From positions 140,258-204,257 of IMG/VR virus record IMGVR_UViG_3300044821_000131: 64,000 nt of DNA, one strand, 5' to 3'. The position numbers were made by a program, and so were the translations under genes. Under the pieces are notes generated by a model, which searched no databases, was not told the DNA's origin, and was given only the letters and a program-made list of their open reading frames with translations. This document shows positions 40,829-61,104 of this stretch, one piece after another (position 1 is the stretch's first letter; every line of letters begins with the position of its first letter).

Positions 40829-41136
40829 CAGGCAAAAAATCTGACCGCCGGTACAAAACTGATTACCGCTTCGGTCTAATAGGTTCGCAGCTAGGTCTCT
40901 TCTTCACTCTGACACTCGACGGTAAAAAGGATTTTGAGCGTGCCGTCACCACGGCGCGAGAAATGTTGAGCCAGTATAACGTTGGCAGTCTAAATCTGAG
41001 CGACACGTCTATTGGTGTCGGCTCTGGATTCCAACAGGTGGAACTTCACATCCACGAGAAAAATGTGAATCATGAACACATAATCGATTCGAAAACTTAT
41101 GTCGATAAAAGCACCGAACCTCCTGCTGTTCACTGA
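40825..41136 (+). CDS. Hypothetical protein
   Basis: Coupled ORF. Confidence 0.5.
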   Translation: MTGKKSDRRYKTDYRFGLIGSQLGLFFTLTLDGKKDFERAVTTAREMLSQYNVGSLNLSDTSIGVGSGFQQVELHIHEKNVNHEHIIDSKTYVDKSTEPPAVH

Positions 41137-41647
41137 CGGCTCAGGACACGCCGACGGCTTTGGTGGTTACGCCGCCTACGTAAAGACTGCCGACGACCTG
41201 GTGAAGCATTTCTGCATGGGTTCATGTTCGGACACGAGCGTCGACAGAATGGAGTTCACGGCCTTGATCGAGGGTCTTAGGATGGCCATGGAGATGTGGA
41301 TGCGATTCCCCGAAGCTTGGGAGAATGCCATGTCTGATAATCCTGTGCTGCGAAAACCAAGAGTGCTATGGCACAGTGATCGAGAATCACTAGTGCTATC
41401 TGTGAAGAATGTGTATGCGCGCGACAATTGTCCTGATCTATGGGCAGCGTTTGCGCATTTCGAGTCTGTGATGGAGATCGAGGCCAGGCATGTGACGGAG
41501 CCATTTACGGACACGGTGTCCGAGTTTGTCGAGGTCGACCTGCAATCAAGTACTGGACGTGATATGATGAAGAACTACTATCGTCAGACGCCGTTGAGGT
41601 GTGACGAGGAGCTACTCAAAAAACGAATTAAGAAAACAAAAACATGA
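41099..41647 (+). CDS. Ribonuclease HI-like protein
   Basis: LFTDGS (D10), DRMEFTALIEGL (E48), WHSDRESLV (D70). Confidence 0.8.
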   Translation: MSIKAPNLLLFTDGSGHADGFGGYAAYVKTADDLVKHFCMGSCSDTSVDRMEFTALIEGLRMAMEMWMRFPEAWENAMSDNPVLRKPRVLWHSDRESLVLSVKNVYARDNCPDLWAAFAHFESVMEIEARHVTEPFTDTVSEFVEVDLQSSTGRDMMKNYYRQTPLRCDEELLKKRIKKTKT

Positions 41648-45108: not shown

Positions 45109-47142
45109 ATGAACATTGCCACACTTTATTCCGCTATGGTCGACCGAATTAACCTGCTCGACCACGCTTACTGGGTGCAGAACGAACCTTTAGTCAGCGA
45201 CCAGCAGTATGACCGAGAAATGCAGTCACTTATAGCGTTCGAAAAGGATCACCCCGATCTCGTATCTGTCAGAAGCCCGACCCAAAGAATTGGTGGCGGA
45301 CTAGCATCTGGTTTCGTGTCCCGACCCCACGTGTTGCCTTGCCTGTCGCTGGATAACGTATTCAAGCCGTCCGATCTGGAACAAAAGATATTGGGCTGGC
45401 ACACAGAATTGGGAATACGCGAAGATATTAAGATGCAGTGCATTGTCGAGCCGAAGATCGACGGCCTGTCTCTGGATCTCAAATATAAGCACGGGGATCT
45501 GGTGCAAGCATTAACCCGAGGCAATGGCACCGAAGGTGATGACGTCACTACGAATGCCAAGACCATCCACAGTATACCGTTTTATGTGCCAGGATTCGGT
45601 AAGGACTCGGACATCCATGTTCGTGGAGAGGTGTTCCTGACTTTCGAGGATTTCAAATTGATTAACGAGCGCCAAGAAACTTTGGGACGCGAGAAGTTCG
45701 CGAATCCAAGAAACGCCGCGTCAGGTTCGATGAAACTACTGGATTCGTTCGAAGTAGCTCAGCGGCGGCTCAGCTTTATGCCGTATCACGTGTTGAACGG
45801 GTGCCATACATTAGTGCCCGTATATCAGGATGAGCTGCATGGATGGTTCAAAGACATGGGATTCAAGGCAGTGCCTTGGTTCAAGGTCGGAGACAACGTT
45901 GAAGATGTAGTGGACTGGGTAATGAAGTTTGAAGCACTACGGCCTACGATGACCTTCCCGGTTGACGGGGCAGTCATCAAACTGAACTATCGTCCTTGTT
46001 GGGACCAATTAACCAATTCGACCCGTGCTGTGCGATGGGGCTATGCCTACAAGTATGCACCTTCGGAAGTTGAAACCGTGTTGAATTCCATAACCGTTCA
46101 GGTAGGACGTACCGGGGCGTTGGCGCCAGTGGCTGAATTGGAACCTGTGGAGATCGATGGCAGCGTCATTGGTCGGGCGTCGTTACATAACTTCGATGAG
46201 ATCGACAGGCTGGACGTTCGTGTGGGCGATACAGTTGTTATAGCGAAACAGGGGGAGATTATTCCTAATGTTGTTCGGGTGGTAAAAGCGAAGCGTAACA
46301 AAAACTGTACAGTTTTTGTTCCACCAGAAGCCTGTCCAATTTGTCAGTCCCCAGTTGAGAAAAAGACACTCAGTGACGGCAAGACACAAAGCGTGGCTAT
46401 TTATTGCAACAATAAACAATGTCCGGCGATTCGCATCGGATCAATTATACACTGGGCGGCCAAGGCTCAGATGGACATTGAGGGCTTAGGAGAATCGTCC
46501 GCAGAGAGCCTCTTCAATCTGTTGCACGTCGACAGCATTGACAAGCTATATGAGCTGACCGTCAAGAGTCTTCGTGGAGTATCTGGCAATGTCTTCGGCG
46601 CCAAGGAGGCTGAGAACCTCTACAACGCGATCCAGGCCAGCAAGGACCGAGGCATGGAAGCAGTACTGGCGGGATTGGGAATCGATCACATTGGTAACAC
46701 GTTGGCCCGAAAGCTTGCTCTTCGCTACGAGGACCTGTGGGCCTTTTTGAATACCGATACTCCGGAATTGCAGAAGCAGGTAGGACCTGTAGTTTTGAAA
46801 TCGCTTGAAGACAATGACGAGTGGATACGCATTATGGTAATGAAACTTGAGAAACACGGTGTCAATTTAAAATCGAAAACGTTTAACCCTGCGGCGGCTT
46901 CTGGAGCGTTGGCCGGAAAATCGATATGCTTTACCGGAACATTAAGCATGGATCGCGATGAGGCGGCACGACTGGCAGAAGCGAAAGGAGCCAAGGTGGT
47001 CAACAGTATAAGCAAGAAACTGTCTTATTTGGTAGTGGGTGACAGCGCTGGCTCCAAGTTGGACAAGGCCAAGGCTTTGGGAACGGTACAGATCATTGGA
47101 GAAGAAGACTTCTTGAAACTAATAGGCAAAACGGATGAGTAA
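45109..47142 (+). CDS. ligA: NAD-dependent DNA ligase
   Basis: EPKIDGLSL adenylation motif, FANPRNAASGS, VDGAVIK, QVGRTGALAPVA, CPIC/CNNKQC zinc finger, HhH repeats, C-terminal BRCT (CFTGTL...AKVVNSISKKLSYLVVG). Confidence 0.97.
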   Translation: MNIATLYSAMVDRINLLDHAYWVQNEPLVSDQQYDREMQSLIAFEKDHPDLVSVRSPTQRIGGGLASGFVSRPHVLPCLSLDNVFKPSDLEQKILGWHTELGIREDIKMQCIVEPKIDGLSLDLKYKHGDLVQALTRGNGTEGDDVTTNAKTIHSIPFYVPGFGKDSDIHVRGEVFLTFEDFKLINERQETLGREKFANPRNAASGSMKLLDSFEVAQRRLSFMPYHVLNGCHTLVPVYQDELHGWFKDMGFKAVPWFKVGDNVEDVVDWVMKFEALRPTMTFPVDGAVIKLNYRPCWDQLTNSTRAVRWGYAYKYAPSEVETVLNSITVQVGRTGALAPVAELEPVEIDGSVIGRASLHNFDEIDRLDVRVGDTVVIAKQGEIIPNVVRVVKAKRNKNCTVFVPPEACPICQSPVEKKTLSDGKTQSVAIYCNNKQCPAIRIGSIIHWAAKAQMDIEGLGESSAESLFNLLHVDSIDKLYELTVKSLRGVSGNVFGAKEAENLYNAIQASKDRGMEAVLAGLGIDHIGNTLARKLALRYEDLWAFLNTDTPELQKQVGPVVLKSLEDNDEWIRIMVMKLEKHGVNLKSKTFNPAAASGALAGKSICFTGTLSMDRDEAARLAEAKGAKVVNSISKKLSYLVVGDSAGSKLDKAKALGTVQIIGEEDFLKLIGKTDE

Positions 47143-47626
47143 GAAACCAACCATTACTTCGGTGATAGATCCATTGTGTGAATGCGACAATTGTGGGCAT
47201 CGCTGTGGTTGTAGCAAGCTGGCTCAAATTCACAATCTGTTGGATCGACTCGACGTGGGTGGGGAGATGCCGGCAGGTGATTGTCCCAAGTGCGGATGTT
47301 TCAGTTATTTGGTCAAGCCAGAGGTTGTTGTTAGCTTCACACGTCAAGCTGGAGAAGATATTAAAAAACTTGATGGCTGCGTTACCCACTATACCAAAGA
47401 TCTTCGTGGTCTCTTGGAAGAACAGCTGGTAAAGGAGATCAATAAAAATCCTATCTTGGCACGAATGAACAAGATGCCGAGATGCTCCAGCGCAATCGAT
47501 AGATTTGGTACCTACAAAACGACGGTGGTGTTCGAAACGGACTTAGATTGGATCACCATGCAGCAAGTGCTGCAGTGGACTTATGACACATTTGGCATGA
47601 CCGGGTCGTTTGAAAAATATGAGTGA
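47135..47626 (+). CDS. Hypothetical protein with Cys clusters
   Basis: CECDNCGHRC and CPKC. Confidence 0.5.
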   Translation: MSKKPTITSVIDPLCECDNCGHRCGCSKLAQIHNLLDRLDVGGEMPAGDCPKCGCFSYLVKPEVVVSFTRQAGEDIKKLDGCVTHYTKDLRGLLEEQLVKEINKNPILARMNKMPRCSSAIDRFGTYKTTVVFETDLDWITMQQVLQWTYDTFGMTGSFEKYE

Positions 47627-48794
47627 CAGACCTCACATTGAACCCAATATGAAGATTAAACTAGGATGGGTGTCCGATAGTCATCTGGGCTATTCGCAGT
47701 ACGGGTCGTCGAAACGTAGACGTGACTTCGCGTTGGGGCTGAAGAATGCAGTCGACGACATGTTGAATAATAAGGTCAATGCTATTATTCACACAGGCGA
47801 CATGTTCAACTCGAATCGGCCTTCCGCGGAAGATGTGCGGGACCTTCAACATATCCACAATCTGCTGATCGCTAAAGGAACATTCCTCTACACGATTGAC
47901 GGCAATCACGATCACACCAATCCGCCTTGGCCCGAAGTACTGATTCCCAACTCCCGGGGAGGAATCGTACTGATCAGCACCTACCCAAAGGTCGTGATCG
48001 GCGATCTAGTGCTACGCGGCTATTCTTCCATGAGCAAAGAGGCGCTGCTCAGTCGGTTCCAGGAGGATGACATGTCGGGTATCGACGTGTTACTATTGCA
48101 TCAACCGATAAAGGAATTCTGTGGGTTTCCGAGTCCAAATGCGCTCGCTATCGACGATGTCCCAGACATATTTGAGTTAACTGCAGTAGGTGATATTCAC
48201 GTGATGGATATTCGTCAACGGCCGAGCGGAGGTTGGATTGGCTATCCTGGGTCCACCGAGATGTGTAGTTCGTCTGAGTGTCCAGACAAGTATTGGATCG
48301 AGCTTAACTTCGGCGACCGTAAATTGGTGTCTTACGATCCTCACAAAATTCGTACACGACCTGTATTACACTGGTTAGTAAACACGGAGGCAGAGTTGAC
48401 GGCGAAACTGGATGAGTTTGATCGATTGGAAACGGAACTCAAGAAGACCGACCCGCGCGAACCCATGCTGTACGTGAAGTTCCCGACCAGCCTGTCCGAC
48501 GTGATCGCCCGCGTACGTCAGAAATTGGATCCAGACAAATACATCGTTGTTCTGCAACCTATATATCTGAACCCGGAATCAGCTACAGGTGTGATAAATC
48601 CGCTGGCGGTGCAGGCAGAAGACAAGGATATCAGTGTGCAGGACCTCTTGAACGCGAAGGTACCGACGGAAGATGGGCTGTATCAGATAGCGTCTCAGAT
48701 GTTGAATCCGGATATTGATGCGGGTAAGGCGTTGAAAGAGTTCGTAGAGGCACGCCTGGCCGCGATTGAGGCCAATGCAACCGAAAGTTCTTGA
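47619..48794 (+). CDS. Mre11/SbcD-like nuclease
   Basis: SDSHLG, HTGDMF, DGNHD, LLLHQ, GDIH and YPGS metallophosphoesterase motifs. Confidence 0.92.
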   Translation: MSDRPHIEPNMKIKLGWVSDSHLGYSQYGSSKRRRDFALGLKNAVDDMLNNKVNAIIHTGDMFNSNRPSAEDVRDLQHIHNLLIAKGTFLYTIDGNHDHTNPPWPEVLIPNSRGGIVLISTYPKVVIGDLVLRGYSSMSKEALLSRFQEDDMSGIDVLLLHQPIKEFCGFPSPNALAIDDVPDIFELTAVGDIHVMDIRQRPSGGWIGYPGSTEMCSSSECPDKYWIELNFGDRKLVSYDPHKIRTRPVLHWLVNTEAELTAKLDEFDRLETELKKTDPREPMLYVKFPTSLSDVIARVRQKLDPDKYIVVLQPIYLNPESATGVINPLAVQAEDKDISVQDLLNAKVPTEDGLYQIASQMLNPDIDAGKALKEFVEARLAAIEANATESS

Positions 48795-49071
48795 ACACGT
48801 AGGATTCCTAAACGTATTCCTTACCGACCCAGAAATCATCGTTGAGTTGGTTGATGATGAAGACCACGACTTGGGAATGTTCGGATGCTGTTGTTGTTCG
48901 GAAAAGGAACTCATGGAGTTTGTGCTTTTCCGGGCAGCTATACAGTGCGGTTGTGGTCGTTTCGATTCTCAATTGGAGCAGGTGACTGCGGTTGTTAGAG
49001 GACTGGGTCAGGAGTGGATATTAAATTACAAGCATGAAAAACTTAAATACGAAATAGAGCGACATGTCTAA
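48775..49071 (+). CDS. Hypothetical protein
   Basis: ~98 aa ORF overlapping both neighbours. Confidence 0.4.
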   Translation: MQPKVLEHVGFLNVFLTDPEIIVELVDDEDHDLGMFGCCCCSEKELMEFVLFRAAIQCGCGRFDSQLEQVTAVVRGLGQEWILNYKHEKLKYEIERHV

Positions 49072-49648
49072 AAACAAACCAATGACTAATTACGACGAAT
49101 ATAGACTGAATGACGACAAGCATTGGGAGTGGCACACGACATTTATTGGCCGTCTGATGCAGCACAATTATCGTGTCTATCACATTCTGGACGGCGTATT
49201 CAAAATCGCACCGAATTTAGGTGCCATTGTTGAGATCGGTACTGGTTGTGGGGCGCTTACCACGTATCTAGGACTGTGGGGCTTACATCTAAACATCCCT
49301 GTGCTGACGGTCGATAATGTGAGATCTACAGATACGGATGCATTCCTGCAACGCCTCGGTGTGACTGTACTGGATGGCGATGTATTTTCCACAGAGGTCT
49401 ACCGAAAGATAAAAGAATTCGTTGGCCAGCGTCCCGTATTTTTATTGTGTGATGGTGGGGCTAAACAACGAGAGTTTGACACTTGGGCACGACTACTTGT
49501 ATCTGGATCATTCATAGCGGCGCACGATCTAGGTCACGAGTTTTCGGTTGAGAATATATCGGAATGGACTCGAACCCTAGTTACTCCCGTTATGGAAGAA
49601 AGGTGGAACGAGATGAATGCTCAAATTGCAATATTTAAAGTTAATTAA
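49064..49648 (+). CDS. Class I SAM methyltransferase, CmcI-like
   Basis: IVEIGTGCGALTTYL, VLTVD, LLCDGG and IAAHD motifs. Confidence 0.7.
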   Translation: MSKNKPMTNYDEYRLNDDKHWEWHTTFIGRLMQHNYRVYHILDGVFKIAPNLGAIVEIGTGCGALTTYLGLWGLHLNIPVLTVDNVRSTDTDAFLQRLGVTVLDGDVFSTEVYRKIKEFVGQRPVFLLCDGGAKQREFDTWARLLVSGSFIAAHDLGHEFSVENISEWTRTLVTPVMEERWNEMNAQIAIFKVN

Positions 49649-49653
49649 ACCGC

Positions 49654-52248
49654 ATGATAATCGAAAAACTAATTGGTGACAACTGGGGTAAACACCGGCA
49701 CTTCGAATTTGAGAGCAACGGAAGCATCGTCGGTGTCGTCGGACCAAACGGGTCTGGCAAATCAACCGTACTGGACCTGGTCGAATTCCTGATAACCGGG
49801 CAGACCCGTGATAATCTGGATTCGTATGTCCGCAATCAGCAAGGCAACGGCGGCGGCTCCATGACCTTCGTGAAGAACGGTCAACGGGGAACCATCATGC
49901 GCCAGATCGGCTCCACCAAGAAGCGCGAACTCGTTTGGGGCGATCAGACGTTGAAGTCAGTCAAAGACGTGGACAAGCTGATGTCGGAAATATTCGGTGC
50001 TGATAAAAAGGCCTTGGCTAACTCGGTGTTCGTAAATCAAGGCACACTGCAAGATATCCTTTTTAAGGACGGCGTGGATAGAAGTCGAGCGTTCCTGCAG
50101 TTGGTCAATTTATCCTTCTGCGAGGCCCGGTCGCACATGGTGAATAGCCAGATCCAAATGATTTCTGGCACTGTGGTGGATCTAACCCCAGCACGGGATG
50201 AGGCGTCTGCTGCTCGTATGGACGCCTTGGGAACCATGAATCGCAAAAACATGGAGCTGTTGGCCTGCCCGAATCATGAGGCCGAGTTGACATACCTGCA
50301 CAATCTGTCCAAGGCCAACACGGAGCTCAATCTGCTGCAGCAACAGATCGGTGAGGCCCTTGTACAGAAGCAGAGCAAGCAAGCCGAGTTGGAGGTCAAA
50401 CTGGCAGGGGCCACGTTGGACCAACGTATTGCGGAGCTGGAGGAGACGCGACAGAATTTAGAGTCGGATAGGACCAAGTCCGACGATTATGGAAAAATCT
50501 TGGCTGAGTTAACGCATTACACCAGAGTGAGAACTGAGATTGATTGCATCACCCGACGCCAGATACAGGTAATGTCTGACTTGAGTTATGTTAATGCGGA
50601 TAGCTATACGGTGCAGCAGATCGAAGGTTTCATCAAAGACCTGAATGATGACATCAAGCTGCACGACAATCGGAAATCCATAACGGAAACGATCGCAGGC
50701 ATCGAATCCAACTTGACGCACTTGCACAATCAGTTGGGAATATTTCCGGTGCCTCCGGCGAGTCAAGATCAGCTGAATAAAGTGCAGCACGATTTGCAGT
50801 TGAAACGATCGTCGGTATCACAACTGTCACAGTACACAAGACTACAGGCCAAGATCAAAGGTCGGGTGAGTGCGAAGTCCGAATGTACCGGTGATTGTCC
50901 GGAATGTGGTCTCACCCTGATGGATATAAATCAATTAAACGATGAGTATCTTCAAGGTAAGACGGCAGAGATCGAGCTTTTGACTTCCGAGATAAAGGTT
51001 CTTGAGAAGCAACAGTCGGACTGGCTATCCGCATTGGCAGAATATAACCGAAAGAAAAATAATCTTGAAGGAAGCATCGAAAGTCAGAAACAGGCGAAGT
51101 TGAGAGAGCAGCAACGTCTGGCTGACATCAAGACAAAGTTTGACTACGAGGTGGCGAAAGAAGACGTACGAGCTTGGTCTGACATCCGGGAAAAGACAAA
51201 GGAACTTTTAACTGAGCAGAGCAATCTGGATACCCAGAAAGCGACGGCTATAAAATTACTGGACACGTTCCCATTGGGAGCGTCTAACTGGGAACGACGT
51301 TACGAATTTTCCGCCGCGGGACACAGTGATCTGTCCAGCCGCACCACCCACTGGTCCAATCTGTACAATCAGCGCAATCAGCAGTTGAGTCTGTCCAACA
51401 ACTTGGCCAGCCAAATCGAAACCATAACCCATAGTCTGGCCCAGATGCAAACGCGAGTCACCGAGGCGTCGGCGATCTTTAACGCCCCGGCGCCTGGTGT
51501 ACTGTCAGAGAAGTTGCAAGATACTAGTGTGTCCATGACCCAGGTGGAATCTGAACTGTCAGCCGCGGAGCACCACCGTATAAGTCTAAAGGGAGAAGTG
51601 AAAACAGCCGTAGAGGCATATCAGGCGGCCAATGTTCGCTTTCAAGACTTGGAACAACGAATTGCCCAGAACCGAGCAAAGCTAGACCTGTTAAATGATC
51701 TGCGGCGGTTAAAAGACCTGCTGGGTAACGACGGCATACCCATGATGTTTGTGCGGCACAAGTTTGAGAAGTTGGCGCAGCATACACAGGATGGGTTGCA
51801 GCAGATGAATGCGAACTTCTATATATTCATTGACAAGGATAAGGATTTGGAGTTCCTATTCCATCGTCTGGATGAGCCGACGAAGTTCGACCTGCCGATG
51901 TGCAAGTTGTCAGGCGGTCAACGCGTTCGCCTGTGCTTGGCATTTCTGATGGCTTTGCAGAAGACGCTGATCAAAGACATAGGTCTTCTGGTGTTGGATG
52001 AGCCGCTAGGCGGATTGGACATAAATGGTGTGGAACAAGTTATTGAATTTCTGAGTTTGATGAAACAGGAATTGAAGAATGCCGAACATCAAATCTGGAT
52101 CGTGGACCACAATTTCGCGATCGAGCAAGCATTGGAAAAAGAATTGAAATTAGGACAAGAACAAAATAATCATGAACAAGAAAACGCAGATCCAGCAGAA
52201 CAAGAAGTTGTCGCCGAAAGAATTGATCACGTTCATACGGAAGCCTGA
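49654..52248 (+). CDS. Rad50/SbcC-like SMC ATPase
   Basis: GPNGSGKST Walker A, VNQG Q-loop, coiled coils with central CPEC zinc hook, LSGGQ signature, LVLDEP Walker B, IVDH. Confidence 0.93.
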   Translation: MIIEKLIGDNWGKHRHFEFESNGSIVGVVGPNGSGKSTVLDLVEFLITGQTRDNLDSYVRNQQGNGGGSMTFVKNGQRGTIMRQIGSTKKRELVWGDQTLKSVKDVDKLMSEIFGADKKALANSVFVNQGTLQDILFKDGVDRSRAFLQLVNLSFCEARSHMVNSQIQMISGTVVDLTPARDEASAARMDALGTMNRKNMELLACPNHEAELTYLHNLSKANTELNLLQQQIGEALVQKQSKQAELEVKLAGATLDQRIAELEETRQNLESDRTKSDDYGKILAELTHYTRVRTEIDCITRRQIQVMSDLSYVNADSYTVQQIEGFIKDLNDDIKLHDNRKSITETIAGIESNLTHLHNQLGIFPVPPASQDQLNKVQHDLQLKRSSVSQLSQYTRLQAKIKGRVSAKSECTGDCPECGLTLMDINQLNDEYLQGKTAEIELLTSEIKVLEKQQSDWLSALAEYNRKKNNLEGSIESQKQAKLREQQRLADIKTKFDYEVAKEDVRAWSDIREKTKELLTEQSNLDTQKATAIKLLDTFPLGASNWERRYEFSAAGHSDLSSRTTHWSNLYNQRNQQLSLSNNLASQIETITHSLAQMQTRVTEASAIFNAPAPGVLSEKLQDTSVSMTQVESELSAAEHHRISLKGEVKTAVEAYQAANVRFQDLEQRIAQNRAKLDLLNDLRRLKDLLGNDGIPMMFVRHKFEKLAQHTQDGLQQMNANFYIFIDKDKDLEFLFHRLDEPTKFDLPMCKLSGGQRVRLCLAFLMALQKTLIKDIGLLVLDEPLGGLDINGVEQVIEFLSLMKQELKNAEHQIWIVDHNFAIEQALEKELKLGQEQNNHEQENADPAEQEVVAERIDHVHTEA

Positions 52249-52402
52249 AGTCGTTTGGTATGGACCGCACGCTTGTGAACGATGTGCTTGTAACGTCGTA
52301 AAATCATCGATTGAGTCCGGTGGTATAACGTTGGACTTCGAGTTTGATTCGCACTATCCGAATCATAAGTGGACTCAACATCAATGTGGTCAGCCGAAAT
52401 AA
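52172..52402 (+). CDS. Small Cys/His-containing hypothetical protein
   Basis: HACERC...HKWTQHQC; overlaps the Rad50 3' end by 77 nt. Confidence 0.45.
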   Translation: MNKKTQIQQNKKLSPKELITFIRKPEVVWYGPHACERCACNVVKSSIESGGITLDFEFDSHYPNHKWTQHQCGQPK

Positions 52403-52405
52403 CTT

Positions 52406-52903
52406 GTGTTAATTCTAGCGCGCCTGCGTCTAAACACGCCGATGCTTGGTGATATGACGCCAGGCCGAGACGGCATAAGACGCTTTCGAAAAGAGAGTTC
52501 TATGGTTCTCGTGAACGAGCAAGCGTGGCGCGGTCAGTTTGAACAGGCGGCGCGTGACGCTCGTATGCTGGTTAACATTAATGCAATCCTGCCACCGAGA
52601 ACCATACTGCCGGCCAGCTATCACATTTACACACGGCATTACTCACAGGTAAAAACGGATTACTTCGAATCGTTCCGAAAGGGTACCATACTGACCATGA
52701 TCTTCAGGATTGAGGAAACCATGGCCAAAGCACCGACCTTAGACCAGTTCACCACACTGTTATCGCTGGTAGGTACTTGGTTAGGGCTATCGCCTTGGGG
52801 TAGTAAATTTAATTTCGGACGATTCGAAGTATTGGACACACACGTGGTTGAGGAGAAAAATAATGAACAAAGCACCATTCAAACTGATTGTCAGTCGGAC
52901 TGA
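52406..52903 (+). CDS. Stand-alone RAMP superfamily (Cas7/Csm3/Csf2-like) protein
   Basis: RLRLNTPMLG (motif I), VLVNEQAWRGQFEQAA (SxxKG-like helix), FESFRKGTILTMIFRI, Gly loop LVGTWLGLSPWGSKFNFGRFEV; GTG start. Confidence 0.65.
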   Translation: MLILARLRLNTPMLGDMTPGRDGIRRFRKESSMVLVNEQAWRGQFEQAARDARMLVNINAILPPRTILPASYHIYTRHYSQVKTDYFESFRKGTILTMIFRIEETMAKAPTLDQFTTLLSLVGTWLGLSPWGSKFNFGRFEVLDTHVVEEKNNEQSTIQTDCQSD

Positions 52904-53144
52904 AGACAACGCACGACTGCATCTACTGATTCTTACCGATACTGAAGTCTTGCTAAACTTGGCCAACGCCGCGCAAGCACAAGACCTTGCTGGACACGTC
53001 ATCGATCTTGGAAAAGATTCGGACACAGGAATAGAGTCGATCTTACTGGAGGTTAAGTCTTCGGGAACACCCAACGGTAAGACAGCCTATTTCCGCGAGG
53101 TAGCACAACACGCAGATCGTATTGTGCATGTAGACACGCTATGA
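52863..53144 (+). CDS. Hypothetical protein
   Basis: 93 aa ORF between the RAMP and helicase genes. Confidence 0.45.
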   Translation: MNKAPFKLIVSRTEDNARLHLLILTDTEVLLNLANAAQAQDLAGHVIDLGKDSDTGIESILLEVKSSGTPNGKTAYFREVAQHADRIVHVDTL

Positions 53145-54598
53145 TCCGAATTACTTGGTACTCCGGAGAACTTGTAGTCTCAGACTCAGACCGCGCACCT
53201 GACGACGCCTGTCCCATTGAGTCGAAGTTGTATTACACGCACAAGAGCTTGGTACAGAATGAAGAGAAGCCTTGGATCCGAGATGTGACCAAAGAGAAGG
53301 TGAGCTTGGTACGGCCGCTCATGGGACAGCCGTGTCGAACGTTTGTATGTTATCAAGGACTTCTGGATCGGGTGCTCGACGCCTGCAAGAAAAAGAGACT
53401 GGCCTACGAGTTGATCGACGCGCGGGATCCGATGCCGGCGCCGCAGGTCAAGAACATGAAGGGATTCAGGAACGGGCAGTTCACCGCGGTGATTAATTTT
53501 CTGTCACCGAACCGCTCTGGAATATTAAAATGTCCTACCCGCTGGGGAAAAACGGTTGCACTTGTTAACGTAATCCGAGCCTATCCAAATACCCCGACAA
53601 TATTGGCGGCGCCTGGTGTTGACCTGATGCGGCAGCTGGTCGACGAATTGAAGGCCGCGTTGCCCGGGAGAACCATCACGGGACTGTTCACTGGATCGAA
53701 AGACAAGAATCAGTCGCAGGACATAACCGTGTGCAGTCTGGACTCGTTGGAAAAAATAAACCCAGATCACGTGCGGCTGCTGCTGATAGACGAACCACAC
53801 GCGATCGCAACGCCCTCCCGAATGTTAAATGTGGCCAAATTTAAGCACGCGCGCATCTACGGGTTCGGTGCAACAGTTGAAGGTAGATTCGATGGTGCCG
53901 ATATAATAACGGAAGGTTTGGTTGGTCCGGTCTTGTACGAGAGAACATTTCAACAGGCTGTGGCCGATGGAGCTATCTGTCCACTTGTAGTATACATGTT
54001 GAAACTGGAGTTCCCGACGTTCGAGTGTCAGAGCCGTGATCATGCCTATCGCTACCTTGTGTACAAGAATAAAGATCTGTGTGCCATCGTTCAAGAGATA
54101 GTGGCTTCCAAGATACCTGAGGATTGGCAGACTCTAATATTTGCCGATCAACAGAAGCAGGTGGATCTGATCAATCAGTTCGTCGAGTCTGGCGTCGGAG
54201 CGGTGGCGTCGCGGATGAATACGAAGGAGCGACGGGAAATGTTTGCGGCGATGAAAGCTGGAACGATCAAGCGCTGTGTGTCCACTAGCATCTACGCACA
54301 AGGTGTAACATTTCCGGACCTGCGGGTGATCATCAATACGTCGGGCGGTGGAGGCTCTATTACGGGTACGCAGAAGCCTGGACGTCTGGCGCAGATACGG
54401 CCAGGTAAGAAAGCCGGATATCTGGTGGATTTCCTGCTGGAACCGAAGGACTGGCATTTACGCGAGAATCAGAATTACGGACCTTTGGACAAGTGGTCAT
54501 CGGTGGTGTTCGATTGTCGTAATCGAATGAAAGTATATCAAGAAAACGGCTACGATGTACGCATTGTACGTTCGGTAGATGAAATCAATTTTGAATAA
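53141..54598 (+). CDS. Superfamily 2 helicase (UvsW/RadD-like)
   Basis: CPTRWGKT Walker A, LLIDEPH Walker B, GATVEG motif III, TSIYAQGVTFPDL motif V, QKPGRL motif VI. Confidence 0.9.
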   Translation: MIRITWYSGELVVSDSDRAPDDACPIESKLYYTHKSLVQNEEKPWIRDVTKEKVSLVRPLMGQPCRTFVCYQGLLDRVLDACKKKRLAYELIDARDPMPAPQVKNMKGFRNGQFTAVINFLSPNRSGILKCPTRWGKTVALVNVIRAYPNTPTILAAPGVDLMRQLVDELKAALPGRTITGLFTGSKDKNQSQDITVCSLDSLEKINPDHVRLLLIDEPHAIATPSRMLNVAKFKHARIYGFGATVEGRFDGADIITEGLVGPVLYERTFQQAVADGAICPLVVYMLKLEFPTFECQSRDHAYRYLVYKNKDLCAIVQEIVASKIPEDWQTLIFADQQKQVDLINQFVESGVGAVASRMNTKERREMFAAMKAGTIKRCVSTSIYAQGVTFPDLRVIINTSGGGGSITGTQKPGRLAQIRPGKKAGYLVDFLLEPKDWHLRENQNYGPLDKWSSVVFDCRNRMKVYQENGYDVRIVRSVDEINFE

Positions 54599-54600
54599 TT

Positions 54601-55077
54601 ATGGGCGATAGATTTTCGACGACTTTGGAAATAGGTGGTAAGTTGGAACGGTCGAAGTTGCATGAGTTGGTAGAAGCACTACGGTCCGATACTTACGGCC
54701 TTGACTGGGGTGATCCGGGCGCTGAGACCGAGTTCAGGGAATACATAGAACACGCATCTGAGAATACAGGCATTTTAAGTTTTCACTGCAGTGAATTGTC
54801 TCTTAGCAGTACGGCTACAACTGATTTTTGTGAAGAGAACAGACTGTCATATGTTACTTACCAAGAAGGAAAGCACGAATATGATGGCGATATAAGTTGG
54901 TGGCGTCCGGGAATGAAAATACCAAGAATTCACATGGCAGATCATGCAGGATCGAGGCCGGTTTTGGGTTTAAGTGAGCTGAAAAACTATAAGACCCGAG
55001 GTCTGACCTTGGCTGGTGTTATTAAAAACCTGCGGGCTGTTCCGCCCAAATTGCCGGTGTTTAAATTAATCCAATGA
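54601..55077 (+). CDS. Hypothetical protein
   Basis: 158 aa ORF. Confidence 0.55.
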   Translation: MGDRFSTTLEIGGKLERSKLHELVEALRSDTYGLDWGDPGAETEFREYIEHASENTGILSFHCSELSLSSTATTDFCEENRLSYVTYQEGKHEYDGDISWWRPGMKIPRIHMADHAGSRPVLGLSELKNYKTRGLTLAGVIKNLRAVPPKLPVFKLIQ

Positions 55078-55436
55078 CCACATTGTCTATAAAGGAACTT
55101 AGGCCCGACAGCATTCCGGAAGGAATGAAAGCGGTGGCCGATATCGCTACGCGGCACCTGACTGAAACTGACGGTAATCTCTTACGATGGAGTAAAACTA
55201 GCGCAAGAATTATAGGCTATGTGGGACCTACAGAATACGGATGGATGCTGGAGACAGCGCAGTACGATGAGGCTATGATGGACGCAGACTTGGGTCTCGC
55301 GGAAGACATCAAACGCAGCGGCATGTCAAAAACGTTTGTGGCCATAATGTCGGCTTTGTACAGACAGAACATCTACTATGTGTGCTTCGATACCGACGGG
55401 TACGAACTCGCCGAGTTTCCTATATTCGACTGGTAA
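55074..55436 (+). CDS. DUF5983-like hypothetical protein
   Basis: IATRHLT...TEYGW...VCFDTDG...FPIFDW pattern. Confidence 0.5.
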   Translation: MTTLSIKELRPDSIPEGMKAVADIATRHLTETDGNLLRWSKTSARIIGYVGPTEYGWMLETAQYDEAMMDADLGLAEDIKRSGMSKTFVAIMSALYRQNIYYVCFDTDGYELAEFPIFDW

Positions 55437-57328: not shown

Positions 57329-57695
57329 AGAGTGTAATGTCCAACTGGACAAGCAGTATATCAATACCGCCGCAGTGCGCAGAAAATTGTTGTTGTTATC
57401 GAAAGAGAAACGTGCCGGCAAATTCAAGCGGGTAAGCGAACAGACGCTGCAGAACGTCAACACGGAAGTTCGTTTAATCGTCGAGCGGATACTTAGAGAA
57501 TACAAACCCGAACACTACAAGACCCAATTGATCAACCGATCAGTAATCAAGGCTTTGTTGGAGGAACGCGCCACGGACAATAGCGTTCCGAAGTTCAAGG
57601 TCACACCGGGAATGTTGGTTAACATTGACAAGCAGCTTCACACATATCTCGACGGTGTAGTTCATCGTCAACCCAGTGTTGGAAAAACGTTATGA
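57318..57695 (+). CDS. Tandem (doublet) histone-fold-like protein
   Basis: Two ~56-aa internal repeats: INTAAVRRKL..RVS..long helix..PEHYKT and INRSVIKAL..KVT..long helix..PSVGKT; basic composition. Confidence 0.6.
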   Translation: MATEECNVQLDKQYINTAAVRRKLLLLSKEKRAGKFKRVSEQTLQNVNTEVRLIVERILREYKPEHYKTQLINRSVIKALLEERATDNSVPKFKVTPGMLVNIDKQLHTYLDGVVHRQPSVGKTL

Positions 57696-58042
57696 GCGAA
57701 AACAAACCGTTGGTTTATCTGGCTGTACCTTATTCCCATCCCGATCCGAGTGTCAGGCAATGGCGTTTCGAACGTGTAAATTTGGCGGCGGCGAAATTGA
57801 TGCGCCAAGGCCTGAATATATTTTCACCCATCAGCCATACACATCCGATATCTGAGGCTGGGGATCTGCCGAAAGGTTGGGAATTCTGGGAGGCGTTTGA
57901 TCGGGCATATCTTACCTGTTGCAACAAATTGATCGTGCTCAAACTGGCCGGATGGCAAGAGAGCGTCGGAGTGACCAGCGAAATCGACATTGCCCGGGAG
58001 CTTGGCATCCCGGTGGAGTTTATCGAAGATGAACAAGGATGA
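57692..58042 (+). CDS. DUF1937 / nucleoside 2-deoxyribosyltransferase-like protein
   Basis: VYLAVPYSHPD, FSPISHTHPI, W..SVGVTSEIDIARELGIPV. Confidence 0.8.
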   Translation: MSENKPLVYLAVPYSHPDPSVRQWRFERVNLAAAKLMRQGLNIFSPISHTHPISEAGDLPKGWEFWEAFDRAYLTCCNKLIVLKLAGWQESVGVTSEIDIARELGIPVEFIEDEQG

Positions 58043-59583: not shown

Positions 59584-61104
59584 ATGGGTAGTATTACACA
59601 AGACTTTAGACGGGCACCGTTGCCTCCAGATGCGTCCGAAGTACGAAAAGACCACACCGGTATAGAGCGGGAAATCTTCTTCGGCGCCGTAGCCTCCTAC
59701 AATTTTTACAAACTTGTCCGCAATAACGTTTGCCCATACGACGCAGAAAAAAGGACATGCCGACCCGATTTTAGCATCGAGCGCTATAACATCGCGTGGG
59801 CCTTCATTGTCGCGTACTGGCAACGTTTTGAGAATATAACACTTCAGCGCGATCTAAGCATTCCCACCGAGACGCTGTGTGCCTTCGTTATTGATTGTGC
59901 CAACCGTTCCGGCTTGGTCGTGGACGTAGCCAAACAGATCACCGACGAAATCGTCGAAGAAGTCGGCTACACGGCAAATCTTACCTACGAGTCCCTGAAA
60001 GCTCTGGCCGAGAGCTCCGCGTTCAACGAGTGGCTGGAGTCCAGGCTATTGTCGCAGGTTACGGGCACCATTGCGGCGCAGAAGAACTTGGGCTATCTGA
60101 CCATGGACACGTTGGAGGAAGCCGTGGCGAAGGCCCGGAGGGCCATTACACCGGTAAAGAATGACTATTTCGTCAACGGAGCCAACTTCCTCTTCGGTAA
60201 ACGGAAAATACGTCCCAGCGTTCCCATAACGGCATTCCCAAATCTGTCCCGCGCGCTGGGCGGCGGCCTGTTCTGGGGAGAAGCCACAATGGTAGCCGGA
60301 ATCAATGCCGGAGGAAAAACGATAGTTACCATGCAGCTTGCTCGAGACTTTGCCTATCAAAGTATTAATACTGTGGTATTTACTACAGAGCGTAAACCGG
60401 AGGAATTGTTTGTTCGTTCTGTGAGTGAGTTATTGAATGTGGATATAGGCCGTCTCATGACGGTTCCGGCAACGGTGAATCAGGAAGTGGAGATAAATTA
60501 CATTCCAGATTGGGTGTGGTCCCACCCGGGAGATGCTGCGCGCTTGGAGCGAATGTACGATGTCTACAGTCAGCATTTACTGTTCATTGATTGGAGTAAG
60601 GGTCAAGGCGCTACCATAAGCGAGAGTTTTGAACAGGTTATGCAGCAGATAGAACAAACCGGATGGATGCCACAAATAGTGATATTCGACTGGATAGGTG
60701 GAGGATTAGACGTTATCGAGAATAAGGACTGGCTTCGGATGTATTACCAGTCGGCCGCAGACTGCCTGATCAATCATAGCAAACGCACGAACCGACATGT
60801 GATCATGACGGCACAATTGAACAAGGAGAAGGTCAAGCCTAGTACTAACTTTGTGGATATGAGCATGTTATCGGAATGTTTGACGATGACTAACAACTTG
60901 ACCAATTTTATTGGTATTACGGCTAAGCGGGATCAGAATCTGAAACCGGGGGCTGCGACGGTGCAGAAGTTTCAGAATCTGTGTGCGGCCAAAGCGACGC
61001 ACGGGCCAGGTGGCATCATACCGGTGGAGGCACAGTTCAATGTACAAAGGTTTATGGAACGTAACGATGCGGCTGAGAAGATGTTGAAGACTGGGGGTGG
61101 TTAA
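59584..61104 (+). CDS. DnaB-like replicative helicase
   Basis: GEATMVAGINAGGKT Walker A, VVFTTE, VIFDWIG Walker B, MTAQLNK. Confidence 0.88.
   Translation: MGSITQDFRRAPLPPDASEVRKDHTGIEREIFFGAVASYNFYKLVRNNVCPYDAEKRTCRPDFSIERYNIAWAFIVAYWQRFENITLQRDLSIPTETLCAFVIDCANRSGLVVDVAKQITDEIVEEVGYTANLTYESLKALAESSAFNEWLESRLLSQVTGTIAAQKNLGYLTMDTLEEAVAKARRAITPVKNDYFVNGANFLFGKRKIRPSVPITAFPNLSRALGGGLFWGEATMVAGINAGGKTIVTMQLARDFAYQSINTVVFTTERKPEELFVRSVSELLNVDIGRLMTVPATVNQEVEINYIPDWVWSHPGDAARLERMYDVYSQHLLFIDWSKGQGATISESFEQVMQQIEQTGWMPQIVIFDWIGGGLDVIENKDWLRMYYQSAADCLINHSKRTNRHVIMTAQLNKEKVKPSTNFVDMSMLSECLTMTNNLTNFIGITAKRDQNLKPGAATVQKFQNLCAAKATHGPGGIIPVEAQFNVQRFMERNDAAEKMLKTGGG

What the first reader, a model, noticed from the sequence alone, without database searches (positions are those of the whole stretch)
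47619..54598. RAMP gene embedded in an Mre11-Rad50-SF2 helicase operon
Seen: Mre11, Rad50, a small Cys/His protein, the RAMP, a 93-aa ORF and a DEPH-box helicase are co-directional with overlapping or near-abutting ends. Established: T4 gp46/47 and UvsW work in recombination-dependent replication together with UvsX/UvsY. No RecA/UvsX-like gene is recognised in this window. Inference: the RAMP may act as a guide-loaded or ssDNA-coating targeting module for end resection and strand invasion. The RAMP-helicase pairing is reminiscent of type IV Csf2-DinG.
Basis: inference. Interest (0 to 1): 0.6.

Follow-up and report, generated by a model that had tools for sequence, protein, structure and literature searches.

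The report
Guide-less RAMP in phage recombination module
A small protein with the fold of the CRISPR backbone proteins (a RAMP, most like the recently described phage Vipr proteins) sits, with no guide-RNA array nearby, between Rad50 and an XPB-like helicase in the DNA replication/recombination genes of a lineage of uncultured large phages, which suggests that this RNA-guided-immunity fold also works in ordinary phage DNA metabolism.

Summary
Mre11 (47619-48794), Rad50 (49654-52248), a 76-aa Cys/His protein, a 165-aa protein "X" (52406-52903), a 93-aa protein and a DEPH-box SF2 helicase (53141-54598) are co-directional and abutting.

X matches no Pfam, PHROG, PADLOC or NCBIfam model. Its AlphaFold model (pLDDT 88) matches CRISPR RAMPs almost exclusively (Z up to 11.6; best non-RAMP Z 6.1). 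A family profile aligns with phage Vipr proteins (hhalign 94.6%, E 7e-8) through a shared G-loop motif.

X belongs to an unannotated family: 196 clusters at 50% identity, all from metagenomes or MAGs. In 46 distinct contigs read as DNA, X always lies between Rad50 and the helicase on the same strand. All 34 loci with a helicase at least 38% identical carry X.

It is not a canonical VIPR or a type IV CRISPR system. There is no 5-nt-periodic vrRNA array or CRISPR array in the window or in 809 kb of related loci, although a SUSP1 control was recovered. Three of the four GGY-reading residues differ, and the helicase is XPB-like, not DinG.

Most likely X binds single-stranded nucleic acid and works with the helicase and Mre11-Rad50. 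That function is inferred, not shown.

The parts
45109..47142 (+). NAD-dependent DNA ligase (LigA). This is the upstream end of the conserved module.
   Evidence: Pfam DNA_ligase_aden E 5e-65, OB, BRCT, HhH. phrog_3869 E 6e-156. Found in the same position in L008 and the P0008 contig.
47135..47626 (+). 163-aa Cys-rich ORF of unknown function
   Evidence: No hit in Pfam, PHROGs, PADLOC or NCBIfam.
47619..48794 (+). Mre11/SbcD-type nuclease (the ORF opens at TTG 47610; ATG at 47619)
   Evidence: Metallophos E 2e-7. NCBIfam Mre11_Sulfo E 1e-22. Syntenic in related loci.
48766..49071 (+).
   Evidence: 47% identical to the L008 99-aa ORF in the same position, E 1e-27.
49064..49648 (+).
   Evidence: Pfam Methyltransf_24, CmcI and FtsJ hits at E 2e-3 to 6e-3, all below the curated cut-offs.
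49654..52248 (+). Rad50/SbcC ATPase
   Evidence: SMC_N E 1e-12, AAA_23, SbcC_Walker_B. NCBIfam Rad50 E 4e-29. phrog_77 E 3e-33.
52172..52402 (+). 76-aa Cys/His (probably zinc-binding) protein that overlaps the Rad50 3' end
   Evidence: 54% identical over 78 aa in the nearest relative L078, E 5e-25, with the Cys/His pattern kept. No family hit. Not conserved across the wider family.
52406..52903 (+). X: a minimal single-RRM RAMP protein with a Vipr-like G-loop. Core is residues 1-150, followed by a disordered acidic tail at 151-165.
   Evidence: AF2 pLDDT 87.9. Foldseek PDB: 112 matches at E <= 0.001, and the 50 listed are all CRISPR-Cas effector structures. VIA wide: Z 11.6/11.5/10.4 to Cmr-beta, Csm and Csm3; best non-RAMP Z 6.1. 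hhalign to the Vipr family: 94.6%, E 7e-8. 196 family clusters.
52863..53144 (+). 93-aa protein between X and the helicase. It overlaps the X tail by 41 nt and its stop overlaps the helicase ATG.
   Evidence: Conserved in L078 (43%, E 3e-17), in L008 (30%, E 7e-13) and weakly in L007. Absent where X abuts the helicase (for example L012).
53141..54598 (+). XPB-like SF2 helicase/translocase with a DEPH Walker B motif
   Evidence: ResIII E 4e-12, Helicase_C E 1e-10. phmmer to archaeal XPB (2fwr, 6p66) E 7e-15. NCBIfam XPB E 9e-13. AF2 pLDDT 84.6. Foldseek top 24 are XPB/TFIIH-XPB; T4 UvsW is rank 25.
59584..61104 (+). DnaB-family replicative helicase, marking the downstream side of the conserved module
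   Evidence: DnaB_C E 2.5e-6. Found in the same relative position in most related loci.

Best explanation
SHOWN:
- 52406-52903 encodes a minimal, single-RRM RAMP-fold protein (X).
- Its closest sequence-level kin are the phage Vipr proteins of VIPR systems. They share a G-loop signature, G-[LV]-[SG]-x-W-x(2)-[KR]-F-(x2)-G-R-F.
- X belongs to an unannotated family found only in uncultured large phages, on contigs up to 214 kb.
- In that lineage it is a vertically inherited fixture of the replication/recombination block: TerL(-) ... (LigA) - Mre11 - Rad50 - X - XPB-like helicase - DnaB - primase - PolA.
- It has no CRISPR array and no pentanucleotide-repeat vrRNA array nearby. It is about 30 residues shorter than Vipr where Vipr carries its alpha-helical bundle. 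It differs at three of the four residues with which Vipr reads the GGY motif.

INFERRED:
- X uses the basic RRM face and G-loop, as Cas7 and Vipr do, to bind a single nucleic-acid strand (RNA or ssDNA). Binding would have little or no repeat-specific reading, and X possibly multimerises along the strand.
- It acts as an accessory of the adjacent XPB-like translocase and the Mre11-Rad50 nuclease. For example, it could hold or mark a displaced strand, R-loop or resected end while the helicase opens or remodels DNA during recombination-dependent or R-loop-primed replication.
- On this reading it is a housekeeping phage DNA-metabolism factor, not an RNA-programmed interference system.
For: Fold:
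- AF2 pLDDT 87.9, topology beta1-alpha1-beta-hairpin-beta-alpha2-Gloop-beta4.
- The 50 listed Foldseek PDB hits are all CRISPR-Cas effector structures, E down to 2e-6.
- VIA wide scan: Z 11.6 (6s6b_I), 11.5 (9g9a_G), 10.4 (Csm3 6ae2_B), 9.4 (Csf2 7jhy_e). The first non-RAMP hit has Z 6.1.
- The BFVD top hit is a viral 'RAMP superfamily protein'.

Link to Vipr:
- The top PDB sequence hit of the family profile is SUSP1 Vipr.
- hhalign to the Vipr family: 94.6%, E 7e-8 local. The global alignment is colinear over 140 columns, 90%, E 2e-7.

Nucleic-acid-binding character:
- Family-wide conserved R25, R26, R29, R77, K134, R139 and an aromatic residue at 131, aligned to Vipr W178, which stacks on a guide base (bioRxiv 10.64898/2026.04.26.720927).
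- The core has a mean net charge of +3.9. Tails of 10 aa or more occur in 78 of 191 members and are net acidic in 70% of those.

Core-module status:
- Always between Rad50 and the helicase, same strand, in 49 loci from 46 distinct contigs. The two DNA-less contigs show the same order.
- The X-to-helicase frame gap is <=60 nt in 34 of 49 loci.
- X is present in 34 of 34 loci with a helicase >=38% identical and in 3 of 27 with a helicase <=28% identical.
- X identity (26-55%) tracks helicase identity (24-60%) across loci.

No guide array:
-. YNNGG x4 was seen once, against 2.55 +/- 1.4 in shuffles, over 809 kb. The SUSP1 control recovered 4 arrays.
- No CRISPR-like repeats and no Rfam hit.
- No frame-free gaps next to X.
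Against: - No binding or activity data exist. The function is inferred from fold, conservation and neighbourhood only.
- Conserved order within one phage lineage can reflect shared ancestry rather than a functional partnership. Variable small ORFs, and in one relative a TnpB element, sit between X and the helicase in about 30% of loci.
- Related modules work without X. In L052 Rad50 is followed directly by the helicase, and L054 has a 537-aa non-RAMP protein in that place.
- A guide RNA that is not periodic, or is encoded in the 140 kb of the contig outside the window, cannot be excluded.
- E88 is 99% conserved, which could mean catalysis rather than mere binding.
- The co-fold of X with the helicase gave no verdict.
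Confidence: 0.5

Rival explanations
1. X is the effector of a bona fide VIPR-like RNA-guided system. Its guide RNA would be encoded elsewhere in the 204-kb genome, or would lack the pentanucleotide periodicity. The XPB-like helicase would be its accessory (Vap), used against competing mobile elements.
For: - Profile-level homology to Vipr, and the G-loop aromatic residue that stacks on a guide base is kept.
- The VIPR preprint states that types III-V carry predicted nuclease or helicase accessory genes, and that some systems encode a single vrRNA or non-canonical repeats.
- Only 64 of 204 kb of this genome were visible.
Against: - All seven described VIPR types have pentanucleotide-motif vrRNAs next to vipr, flanked by long intergenic regions. 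Here, 52 X-containing loci (809 kb) have none, and the genes abut.
- Vipr H17, D177 and R179 are replaced by D/S/E, P and G. X is about 30 residues shorter in the alpha-bundle region, and a 13-residue stretch of the Vipr thumb that includes R136/R138 is missing.
- X sits in a core, colinear replication block and diverges in step with its neighbours. That is unlike an accessory conflict locus.
Confidence: 0.2
2. X is a RAMP-type endoribonuclease (Cas6/Cas5d/Csm3-like chemistry). It would process phage transcripts or RNA primers, or remove RNA from R-loops, in concert with the helicase.
For: - Many RAMPs are metal-independent RNases (established knowledge).
- E88 is 99% conserved, and R77, W41 and aromatic residues at positions 75 and 79 are highly conserved, on and near the hairpin at 73-90.
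- The best structural matches include the RNA-cleaving Csm3/Cmr4 subunits.
Against: - The position equivalent to the Csm3/Cmr4 catalytic Asp loop after beta1 is not conserved. Residue 16 is D in only 33% of members and D22 is often deleted.
- There is no conserved His, as Cas6 has.
- There is no second RRM domain.
- Nothing identifies a substrate.
Confidence: 0.15
3. X is a viral Cas7 mimic acting as an anti-CRISPR. It would poison host class 1 effector assembly or soak up crRNA.
For: - Phages do carry cas-derived genes that antagonise CRISPR immunity (bioRxiv 10.1101/2023.06.24.545427, listed).
- X resembles a trimmed Csm3/Cas7.
Against: - There is no detectable sequence similarity to any CRISPR Cas7 family. 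None of 118 members hit a Pfam RAMP model at E <= 0.01.
- Anti-CRISPRs are typically patchy accessory genes in variable regions. X is fixed in a core replication block over divergence down to about 25% identity.
Confidence: 0.07

Closest known systems
Vipr protein of VIPR systems, for example Escherichia phage SUSP1 (bioRxiv 10.64898/2026.04.26.720920 and .720927; PDB 36pp)
   Same: - Phage-encoded, small, single-RRM RAMP without the second RRM of CRISPR RAMPs.
- Shared G-loop signature and a colinear profile alignment.
- The aromatic G-loop residue (W131 against W178) is conserved.
- Encoded next to a DNA-acting accessory gene.
   Different: - No vrRNA array and no long flanking intergenic regions.
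- About 30 residues shorter where Vipr has its alpha-helical bundle, and part of the thumb is missing.
- The GGY-reading residues H17, D177 and R179 are not conserved.
- It sits in a core replication/recombination block rather than a two-gene conflict locus.
- The family was seen only in metagenomic and MAG sources, with no named NCBI or UniRef protein. It was therefore probably not among the NR-derived Vipr set, though this could not be checked.
Type IV CRISPR-Cas (Csf2/Cas7 filament with DinG in IV-A; array-less IV-B, PMC7937560)
   Same: - A RAMP backbone protein encoded beside an SF2 helicase.
- Fold match to Csf2: Z 9.4 (7jhy_e), Z 9.4 and 8.9 (8rc3, 8rc2).
- Type IV-B, like X, lacks an array. 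Its abstract starts to describe assembly around something other than what was expected, but the listing was cut.
   Different: - No Csf1, Csf3, Cas6 or Cas11 genes and no array.
- The helicase is XPB-like, not DinG/XPD-like.
- X is half the size of Csf2.
- The context is a phage replication module, not a plasmid interference module.
Type III Cas7 subunits (Csm3, Cmr4) and type VII Cas7
   Same: Best structural matches. Nearly the whole of X superposes on the RRM/G-loop core (139-149 residues, rmsd 3.1-3.8 A, Z 10-11.6).
   Different: - 7-16% identity.
- No Pfam RAMP hit.
- The catalytic Asp loop is not conserved.
- No Cas10 or Cas11 partners and no crRNA source.
T4 gp46/gp47 with UvsW, and archaeal Mre11-Rad50-HerA-NurA or XPB-Bax1 pairings (established knowledge)
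   Same: - An Mre11-Rad50 nuclease is encoded with an SF2 helicase in a phage replication/recombination block.
- The helicase matches XPB best, and UvsW at Foldseek E 4e-16.
- As in the XPB-Bax1 pairing, a helicase has a small dedicated partner encoded alongside.
   Different: None of these systems contains a RAMP-fold protein. Bax1 and NurA are nucleases of other folds. No UvsX or UvsY was seen among the window ORFs tested.

Membership tests
RAMP superfamily (fold level) | Ferredoxin-like/RRM core beta1-alpha1-beta2-beta3-alpha2-beta4 | tested here: met
   AF2 model pLDDT 87.9 with that element order. The 50 listed Foldseek hits and the top 42 VIA hits are CRISPR RAMPs; Z up to 11.6 against 6.1 for the best non-RAMP.
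RAMP superfamily (fold level) | Glycine-rich loop between alpha2 and beta4 | tested here: met
   G123, G127, S129, G132, G136, G138, R139 and F140 are 78-100% conserved in 118 members. They lie between helix 112-126 and strand 140-148.
RAMP superfamily (fold level) | Thumb hairpin that inserts into the bound strand | tested here: inconclusive
   A hairpin at 73-90 with conserved R77, F87 and E88 lies at the expected place. However, the global hhalign leaves a 13-residue gap in X opposite the Vipr thumb strand. Coordinates could not be inspected.
VIPR system | Vipr-family protein (sequence-profile homology) | tested here: met
   hhalign of A2 against a 60-sequence Vipr alignment: 94.6%, E 7e-8 over 52 columns. 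The global alignment is colinear, 90%, E 2e-7. The significant signal is confined to beta3-alpha2-Gloop-beta4.
VIPR system | Adjacent vrRNA(s) of 9-16 pentanucleotide (YNNGG or related) repeats | tested here: not met
   No 5-nt periodic array of any mono-, di- or trinucleotide above shuffles in the 64-kb window or the related loci. YNNGG x4 was seen once, against 2.55 +/- 1.4 expected, in 809 kb. The SUSP1 control gave 4 arrays.
VIPR system | vipr flanked by long intergenic regions | tested here: not met
   X starts 3 nt after the preceding stop and overlaps the next ORF. No frame-free gaps of 80 nt or more lie next to X in the related loci, whereas SUSP1 shows 243- and 528-nt gaps.
VIPR system | Residues reading the GGY motif (SUSP1 H17, R138, D177, W178, R179) and the alpha-helical bundle | tested here: not met
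   The aligned positions in X are D/S/E16, a gap, P130 (69%), W/F/Y131 and G132 (98%), so only the aromatic residue is kept. There is only one helix between beta1 and beta2, and X is about 30 residues shorter than Vipr in that region.
VIPR system | Accessory vap gene acting on DNA | tested here: inconclusive
   An XPB-like helicase follows X in every locus, and the preprint mentions helicase Vaps. The helicase equally belongs to the replication block, and the Vap families could not be compared.
Type IV CRISPR-Cas (Csf2-DinG) | CRISPR array and Csf1/Csf3/Cas6 partners | tested here: not met
   No CRISPR-like direct repeats; the only repeats are coding ones. The neighbouring proteins searched gave no cas family in Pfam, PADLOC or NCBIfam.
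Type IV CRISPR-Cas (Csf2-DinG) | DinG (XPD-like) helicase | tested here: not met
   The best sequence and fold matches are XPB (E 7e-15; Foldseek top 24), then UvsW, RadD and FANCM. No DinG or XPD is among the 50 listed matches.
T4-type recombination-dependent replication set | gp46/gp47 (Rad50/Mre11) plus an SF2 branch-migration helicase | tested here: met
   Mre11, Rad50 and an XPB/UvsW-like helicase, with LigA and DnaB in the same block.
T4-type recombination-dependent replication set | UvsX/RecA recombinase and UvsY mediator | tested here: inconclusive
   No RecA-like Pfam or PHROG hit in the window ORFs scanned. Not every ORF was scanned, and 140 kb of the contig lie outside the window.

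The most novel reading that the evidence does not exclude
X represents a second non-CRISPR RAMP lineage, distinct from VIPR, that works without a dedicated repeat-coded guide as a core factor of phage DNA replication/recombination. For example, it could be a strand- or R-loop-holding subunit that recruits or directs an XPB-like translocase and Mre11-Rad50. It would then be either a relic of the pre-guide function from which Vipr and the CRISPR backbone proteins arose, or an exaptation of a Vipr into housekeeping DNA metabolism.
Probability: 0.3. Interest if true: 0.85.

Novelty: new variant of a known kind. Interest (0 to 1): 0.7.

Why it matters
Until 2026, RAMP proteins were known only as CRISPR-Cas subunits. 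The VIPR preprints then showed a phage-borne, single-RRM RAMP using repeat-coded guides.

This locus adds a sizeable and wholly unannotated family (196 clusters at 50% identity). It shares the Vipr G-loop but lacks the guide array and most of the guide-reading residues that could be aligned. It is fixed in a replication/recombination gene block beside Mre11-Rad50 and an XPB-like helicase.

If X binds nucleic acid and works with these enzymes, two things would follow:
- The RAMP fold has a role in ordinary DNA metabolism.
- There would be a concrete, testable candidate for what RAMPs did before (or apart from) RNA-guided interference.

It would also define a new accessory factor for phage Mre11-Rad50/helicase machinery in a lineage with no cultured representative.

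Tried and rejected
- **Family libraries.** Pfam, PHROGs, PADLOC and NCBIfam gave nothing for X, the 76-aa ORF or the 93/98-aa ORF. None of 118 family members hit a Pfam RAMP model.
- **GenBank phages.** tblastn of X, two divergent members and the helicase, plus blastn of the 8-kb region, found no match.
- **GTDB species-representative genomes.** No relative was found with the two peptide patterns used.
- **Sequence search of the PDB.** X alone and the 12-sequence profile found nothing significant. Only the 118-sequence profile put SUSP1 Vipr on top, at E 0.17.
- **Co-folding X with the helicase (complex prediction).** No verdict, so it counts neither for nor against binding.
- **Guide-RNA searches.** Exact and tolerant 5-nt and 6-nt periodic scans for mono-, di- and trinucleotides, the preprint's YNNGG x4 criterion, TRF, a direct-repeat search, Rfam and tRNA scans found nothing beyond chance or coding repeats. 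An 'AA' periodicity in L012 between X and the helicase turned out to lie inside the helicase N-terminus.
- **Split helical-domain idea.** I tested whether the 93-aa ORF is a split-off equivalent of the C-terminal extensions of long family members, or of the Vipr helical bundle. No significant similarity was found.
- **Small ORF between Rad50 and X.** I tested whether it is one conserved family across the lineage. There were no BLAST links beyond the nearest relative.
- **Promoter/terminator scan.** Counts were at the chance level.
- **VIPR type check.** I could not establish whether any of the seven published VIPR types corresponds to this family. The tables are not held, and the supplement legends give no helicase-type details.

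Full report
**1. What is in the sequence**

The window is the last 64 kb of a 204,257-bp IMG/VR viral contig, IMGVR_UViG_3300044821_000131. X lies at contig positions 192,663-193,157.

From 45.1 to 54.6 kb a run of + strand ORFs abut or overlap:
- NAD-dependent ligase, 45109-47142
- a 163-aa Cys-rich ORF
- Mre11, 47610/47619-48794
- a 101-aa ORF, 48766-49071
- a 194-aa weakly methyltransferase-like ORF, 49064-49648
- Rad50, 49654-52248
- a 76-aa Cys/His ORF, 52172-52402
- X, 52406-52903
- a 93-aa ORF, 52863-53144
- a 485-aa SF2 helicase with LLLIDEPHA, 53141-54598

Domain searches confirm the ligase, Mre11, Rad50 and the helicase.

The two small ORFs flanking X are real genes. In the nearest relative (L078) the 76-aa protein is 54% identical and the 93-aa protein 43% identical. 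The latter starts at the same MNKAP, which fixes its start at 52863. It is also related to small ORFs in L008 and L007.

No + strand terminator-like site lies between 44000 and 59226. Further downstream come DUF5983, DUF1937 and DnaB genes. Upstream lie the large terminase on the minus strand, an RNase H-like gene and the tail-fibre genes.

**2. Is X a RAMP?**

X has no hit in Pfam, PHROGs, PADLOC or NCBIfam.

With a 12-sequence alignment, AlphaFold2 gives a confident model (mean pLDDT 87.9, pTM 0.79). The element order is beta1(2-9) - alpha1(38-51) - strands 73-78/84-90/95-102 - alpha2(112-126) - loop - beta4(140-148), followed by a disordered tail from residue 151.

Structure searches:
- Foldseek against the PDB returns 112 matches at E <= 0.001. 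The 50 listed are all CRISPR-Cas effector structures: type VII Cas7, Cas7-11/gRAMP, Csm, Cmr and type IV complexes.
- An independent all-against-all structural scan of 48,161 chains gives Z 11.6 (Cmr-beta 6s6b_I), 11.5 (Csm 9g9a_G), 10.4 (Csm3 6ae2_B), 10.3 (gRAMP) and 9.4 (Csf2 7jhy_e). It covers 139-149 of about 150 core residues at rmsd 3.1-3.8 A.
- The first 42 rows of that scan are all CRISPR RAMPs. The best non-RAMP (an RNase P protein) scores Z 6.1.
- Among predicted viral structures the best hit is annotated as a RAMP superfamily protein.

The loop between alpha2 and beta4 carries the family's most conserved residues: G123, G127, S129, G132, G136, G138, R139 and F140. This is the glycine-rich loop in the position that defines RAMPs.

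**3. The family and its nearest kin**

A full HMMER scan of 1.84 billion representative proteins finds 196 clusters at E <= 1e-3 and 73 at E <= 1e-10, all 110-249 aa. Every member with source information comes from a metagenome or a MAG, and none carries a name. No GenBank phage has X or a close copy of the helicase.

A 118-sequence profile searched against all PDB sequences puts one chain on top: 'SUSP1 Vipr protein' (36pp_D, E 0.17), aligned over the G-loop.

[quoted passage not shown] In those systems:
- Vipr is a phage-encoded, single-RRM RAMP proposed to predate the CRISPR RAMPs.
- It polymerises on vrRNAs made of 9-16 YNNGG repeats plus a 3' tail.
- It silences matching DNA of competing elements, together with an accessory Vap protein.
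- Seven types are described, all with pentanucleotide-motif vrRNAs, and some have nuclease or helicase Vaps.

I fetched the SUSP1 locus (L003), collected 529 Vipr relatives and aligned 60 of them.

Profile-profile comparison of the X family with the Vipr family gives 94.6% probability, E 7e-8, over 52 columns (beta3-alpha2-G-loop-beta4). A forced global alignment is colinear over 140 columns (90%, E 2e-7). Beta1 (I-x-L-T-S-P-x-L-G against I-T-G-T-x-P-L-L-M-H) and alpha1 are in register.

The shared G-loop signature is G-L-S-P-W-G-S-K-F-G-Y-G-R-F in X, against G-L-G-D-W-R-P-R-F-G-R-F in Vipr. X is thus a remote relative of Vipr. It is closer to Vipr at the sequence level than to any CRISPR RAMP model, since none of 118 members hit a Pfam RAMP family.

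**4. Why it is not a canonical VIPR, or a type IV CRISPR system**

*(a) No guide array.* I scanned both strands for 5-nt (and 6-nt) periodic recurrence of any fixed mono-, di- or trinucleotide, and for the preprint's own criterion (YNNGG x >=4).
- The SUSP1 control recovers its four known vrRNAs (10 of 10 GG units).
- The 64-kb window and the related loci never exceed shuffled sequence.
- Over 52 X-containing loci (809 kb), YNNGG x4 occurs once, against 2.55 +/- 1.4 in shuffles.
- TRF and the direct-repeat search find only coding repeats: collagen-like tail-fibre repeats at 22-26 kb and hexapeptide repeats at 63.7 kb. Rfam and tRNA scans are empty.

*(b) No room for an array.* X begins 3 nt after the preceding stop and overlaps the next gene. 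Related loci have no frame-free gaps next to X, whereas the SUSP1 vrRNA regions stand out as 243- and 528-nt gaps.

*(c) The guide-reading apparatus differs.* In SUSP1 Vipr, H17 and D177 hydrogen-bond G1, R138 (thumb) and W178 hold G2, and R179 holds Y3. An alpha-helical bundle holds the skipped target base. In X the aligned positions are:
- D/S/E16 for H17
- P130 (69%) for D177
- W/F/Y131 for W178
- G132 (98%) for R179

A 13-residue stretch of the Vipr thumb is absent. X is about 30 residues shorter between beta1 and alpha1, and the model shows no helical bundle there.

*(d) For type IV CRISPR.* There is no array and no Csf1, Csf3, Cas6 or Cas11. The helicase is not DinG. Its best sequence matches are archaeal XPB (E 7e-15; NCBIfam XPB E 9e-13). 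Its model (pLDDT 84.6) matches XPB/TFIIH-XPB in the top 24 Foldseek rows, with T4 UvsW at rank 25 and RadD and FANCM after it.

**5. Context across relatives**

*Loci anchored on X.* Eleven contigs were looked up by exact protein, two of them listed without DNA. Four further IMG/VR contigs were fetched. All show TerL(-) ... Mre11 - Rad50 - X - helicase - ... - DnaB, often followed by primase and a family A polymerase.

*Loci anchored on the helicase.* I fetched 62 IMG/VR loci and searched their ORFs with HMMs.
- All 34 loci whose helicase is >=38% identical to the window's carry X just upstream.
- Among 27 loci with helicases <=28% identical, only 3 carry X.
- In L052 Rad50 is followed directly by the helicase. 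In L054-56 and L064 a 537-aa unrelated protein fills the slot.

*Over 49 X loci (46 distinct contigs).*
- X is always between Rad50 and the helicase, on the same strand.
- The X-to-helicase reading-frame gap is <=60 nt in 34 loci. The Rad50-to-X gap is <=60 nt in 25 of 46.
- The remainder have one to five small, poorly conserved ORFs inserted. One has a phosphoesterase (L078), one has a TnpB element (the P0008 contig), and two have an intein in the helicase (L007, L010).
- X identity to the window protein (26-55%) tracks that of the helicase (24-60%) and Rad50 (26-41%).

X therefore behaves as a vertically inherited core gene of this module in one deep lineage of uncultured large phages. It does not behave like a mobile accessory gene. 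The caveat is that conserved order within a lineage is weaker evidence of partnership than repeated independent association.

**6. Mechanism**

*Shown:* the RAMP fold, kinship with Vipr, the fixed position in a replication/recombination block, and the absence of a local guide array.

*Inferred from the families:* in Cas7 and Vipr, RRM helix 1 and the G-loop bind the backbone of a single strand, and protomers polymerise along it (established for class 1 effectors).

X keeps the features needed for this:
- basic residues R25, R26, R29, R77, K134 and R139
- the stacking aromatic residue at 131
- a net-positive core (+3.9 on average)

About 40% of members add a disordered tail, which is net acidic in 70% of those with a tail of 10 aa or more. 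This weakly recalls the partner-recruiting tails of phage SSBs.

X has lost, or never had, the parts that read a GGY repeat and hold a skipped base.

My best reading (confidence about 0.5) is a guide-array-less, single-strand (RNA or ssDNA) binding subunit. It would work with the XPB-like translocase and Mre11-Rad50, for instance by holding a displaced strand, R-loop or resected end during recombination-dependent or R-loop-primed replication.

Rivals:
- a true VIPR with a distal or aperiodic guide (0.2)
- a RAMP endoribonuclease, suggested by the 99%-conserved E88 (0.15)
- a Cas7-mimic anti-CRISPR (0.07)

Co-folding X with the helicase returned no verdict and is not used as evidence.

**7. Novelty and verdict**

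Guide loading is unsupported, and the type IV analogy is superseded by the Vipr relationship.

Relative to what is known, including the 2026 VIPR preprints, this is a new variant of a known kind. It is a distinct, unannotated, Vipr-related RAMP family with a different context and without the defining guide array.

I could not check whether the family overlaps one of the seven published VIPR types, because their tables are not held. The absence of named NCBI or UniRef members, and of any vrRNA, argues against overlap.

Interest is high for CRISPR-origin and phage-replication specialists, because the claim can be tested directly by purification, bound-nucleic-acid sequencing and helicase assays.

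Noticed in passing
window 63651-64000 (runs off the end of the window, which is also the end of the contig): An ORF begins at ATG 63651 and enters an 18-nt tandem repeat (14 copies, 85% matches). The repeat encodes hexapeptide repeats (IGN-x-V-x type, left-handed beta-helix-like). It is a coding repeat, not an RNA array.
   Followed up: partly
window 22129-29006: Two very large tail-fibre ORFs (1149 and 1360 aa) overlap by about 650 nt. They carry collagen-like G-X-Y repeats, seen as 9/57/114-nt tandem arrays (31 copies of a 114-nt unit). This is the only other repeat family in the window.
   Followed up: partly
whole window: The window is the terminal 64 kb of IMG/VR contig IMGVR_UViG_3300044821_000131 (204,257 bp). 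It has no tRNA and no Rfam hit, and the 47-55 kb region has no DNA match to any GenBank phage. This is a lineage with no cultured representative.
   Followed up: yes
related contig carrying P0008 (no DNA held); L007 2265-4754; L010 4065-6536; L009 4184-7594: Selfish elements have invaded the same module in relatives. A TnpB (Cas12f-like TNB) gene on the opposite strand sits between X and the helicase, and an IS605 OrfB lies further downstream. Two helicases carry homing-endonuclease/intein (Hom_end_hint) insertions. L009 has an intein-containing 1136-aa protein upstream of X.
   Followed up: no
L078 2929-3495: In the nearest relative (X 72% identical), a 188-aa calcineurin-like phosphoesterase gene is inserted between X and the 99-aa ORF. 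The window has no such gene.
   Followed up: no
L003 (Escherichia phage SUSP1) 983-2083 and 2533-3120: In SUSP1 the vipr gene and its upstream vrRNA lie directly downstream of a DNA ligase gene. In the window the X module also begins with a ligase. This may be coincidence.
   Followed up: no
window 29046-30850; 38120-39955 (-); 41099-41647; 55074-55436; 57692-58042: Other annotations obtained on the way: an FkbM-type methyltransferase and a GT4 glycosyltransferase after the tail fibres; the large terminase on the minus strand; a weak RNase H-like ORF; DUF5983; and a DUF1937/DUF4406 protein.
   Followed up: partly
family members P0087, P0105, P0107, P0113, P0119, P0131, P0151: A subset of X-family proteins carries a conserved C-terminal extension of about 45 residues (L-P-x-x-F ... 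F-L-G-H-x-L-x-x-L-S-x-x-E-L-L-A) that is absent from the window protein. Its role is unknown.
   Followed up: partly
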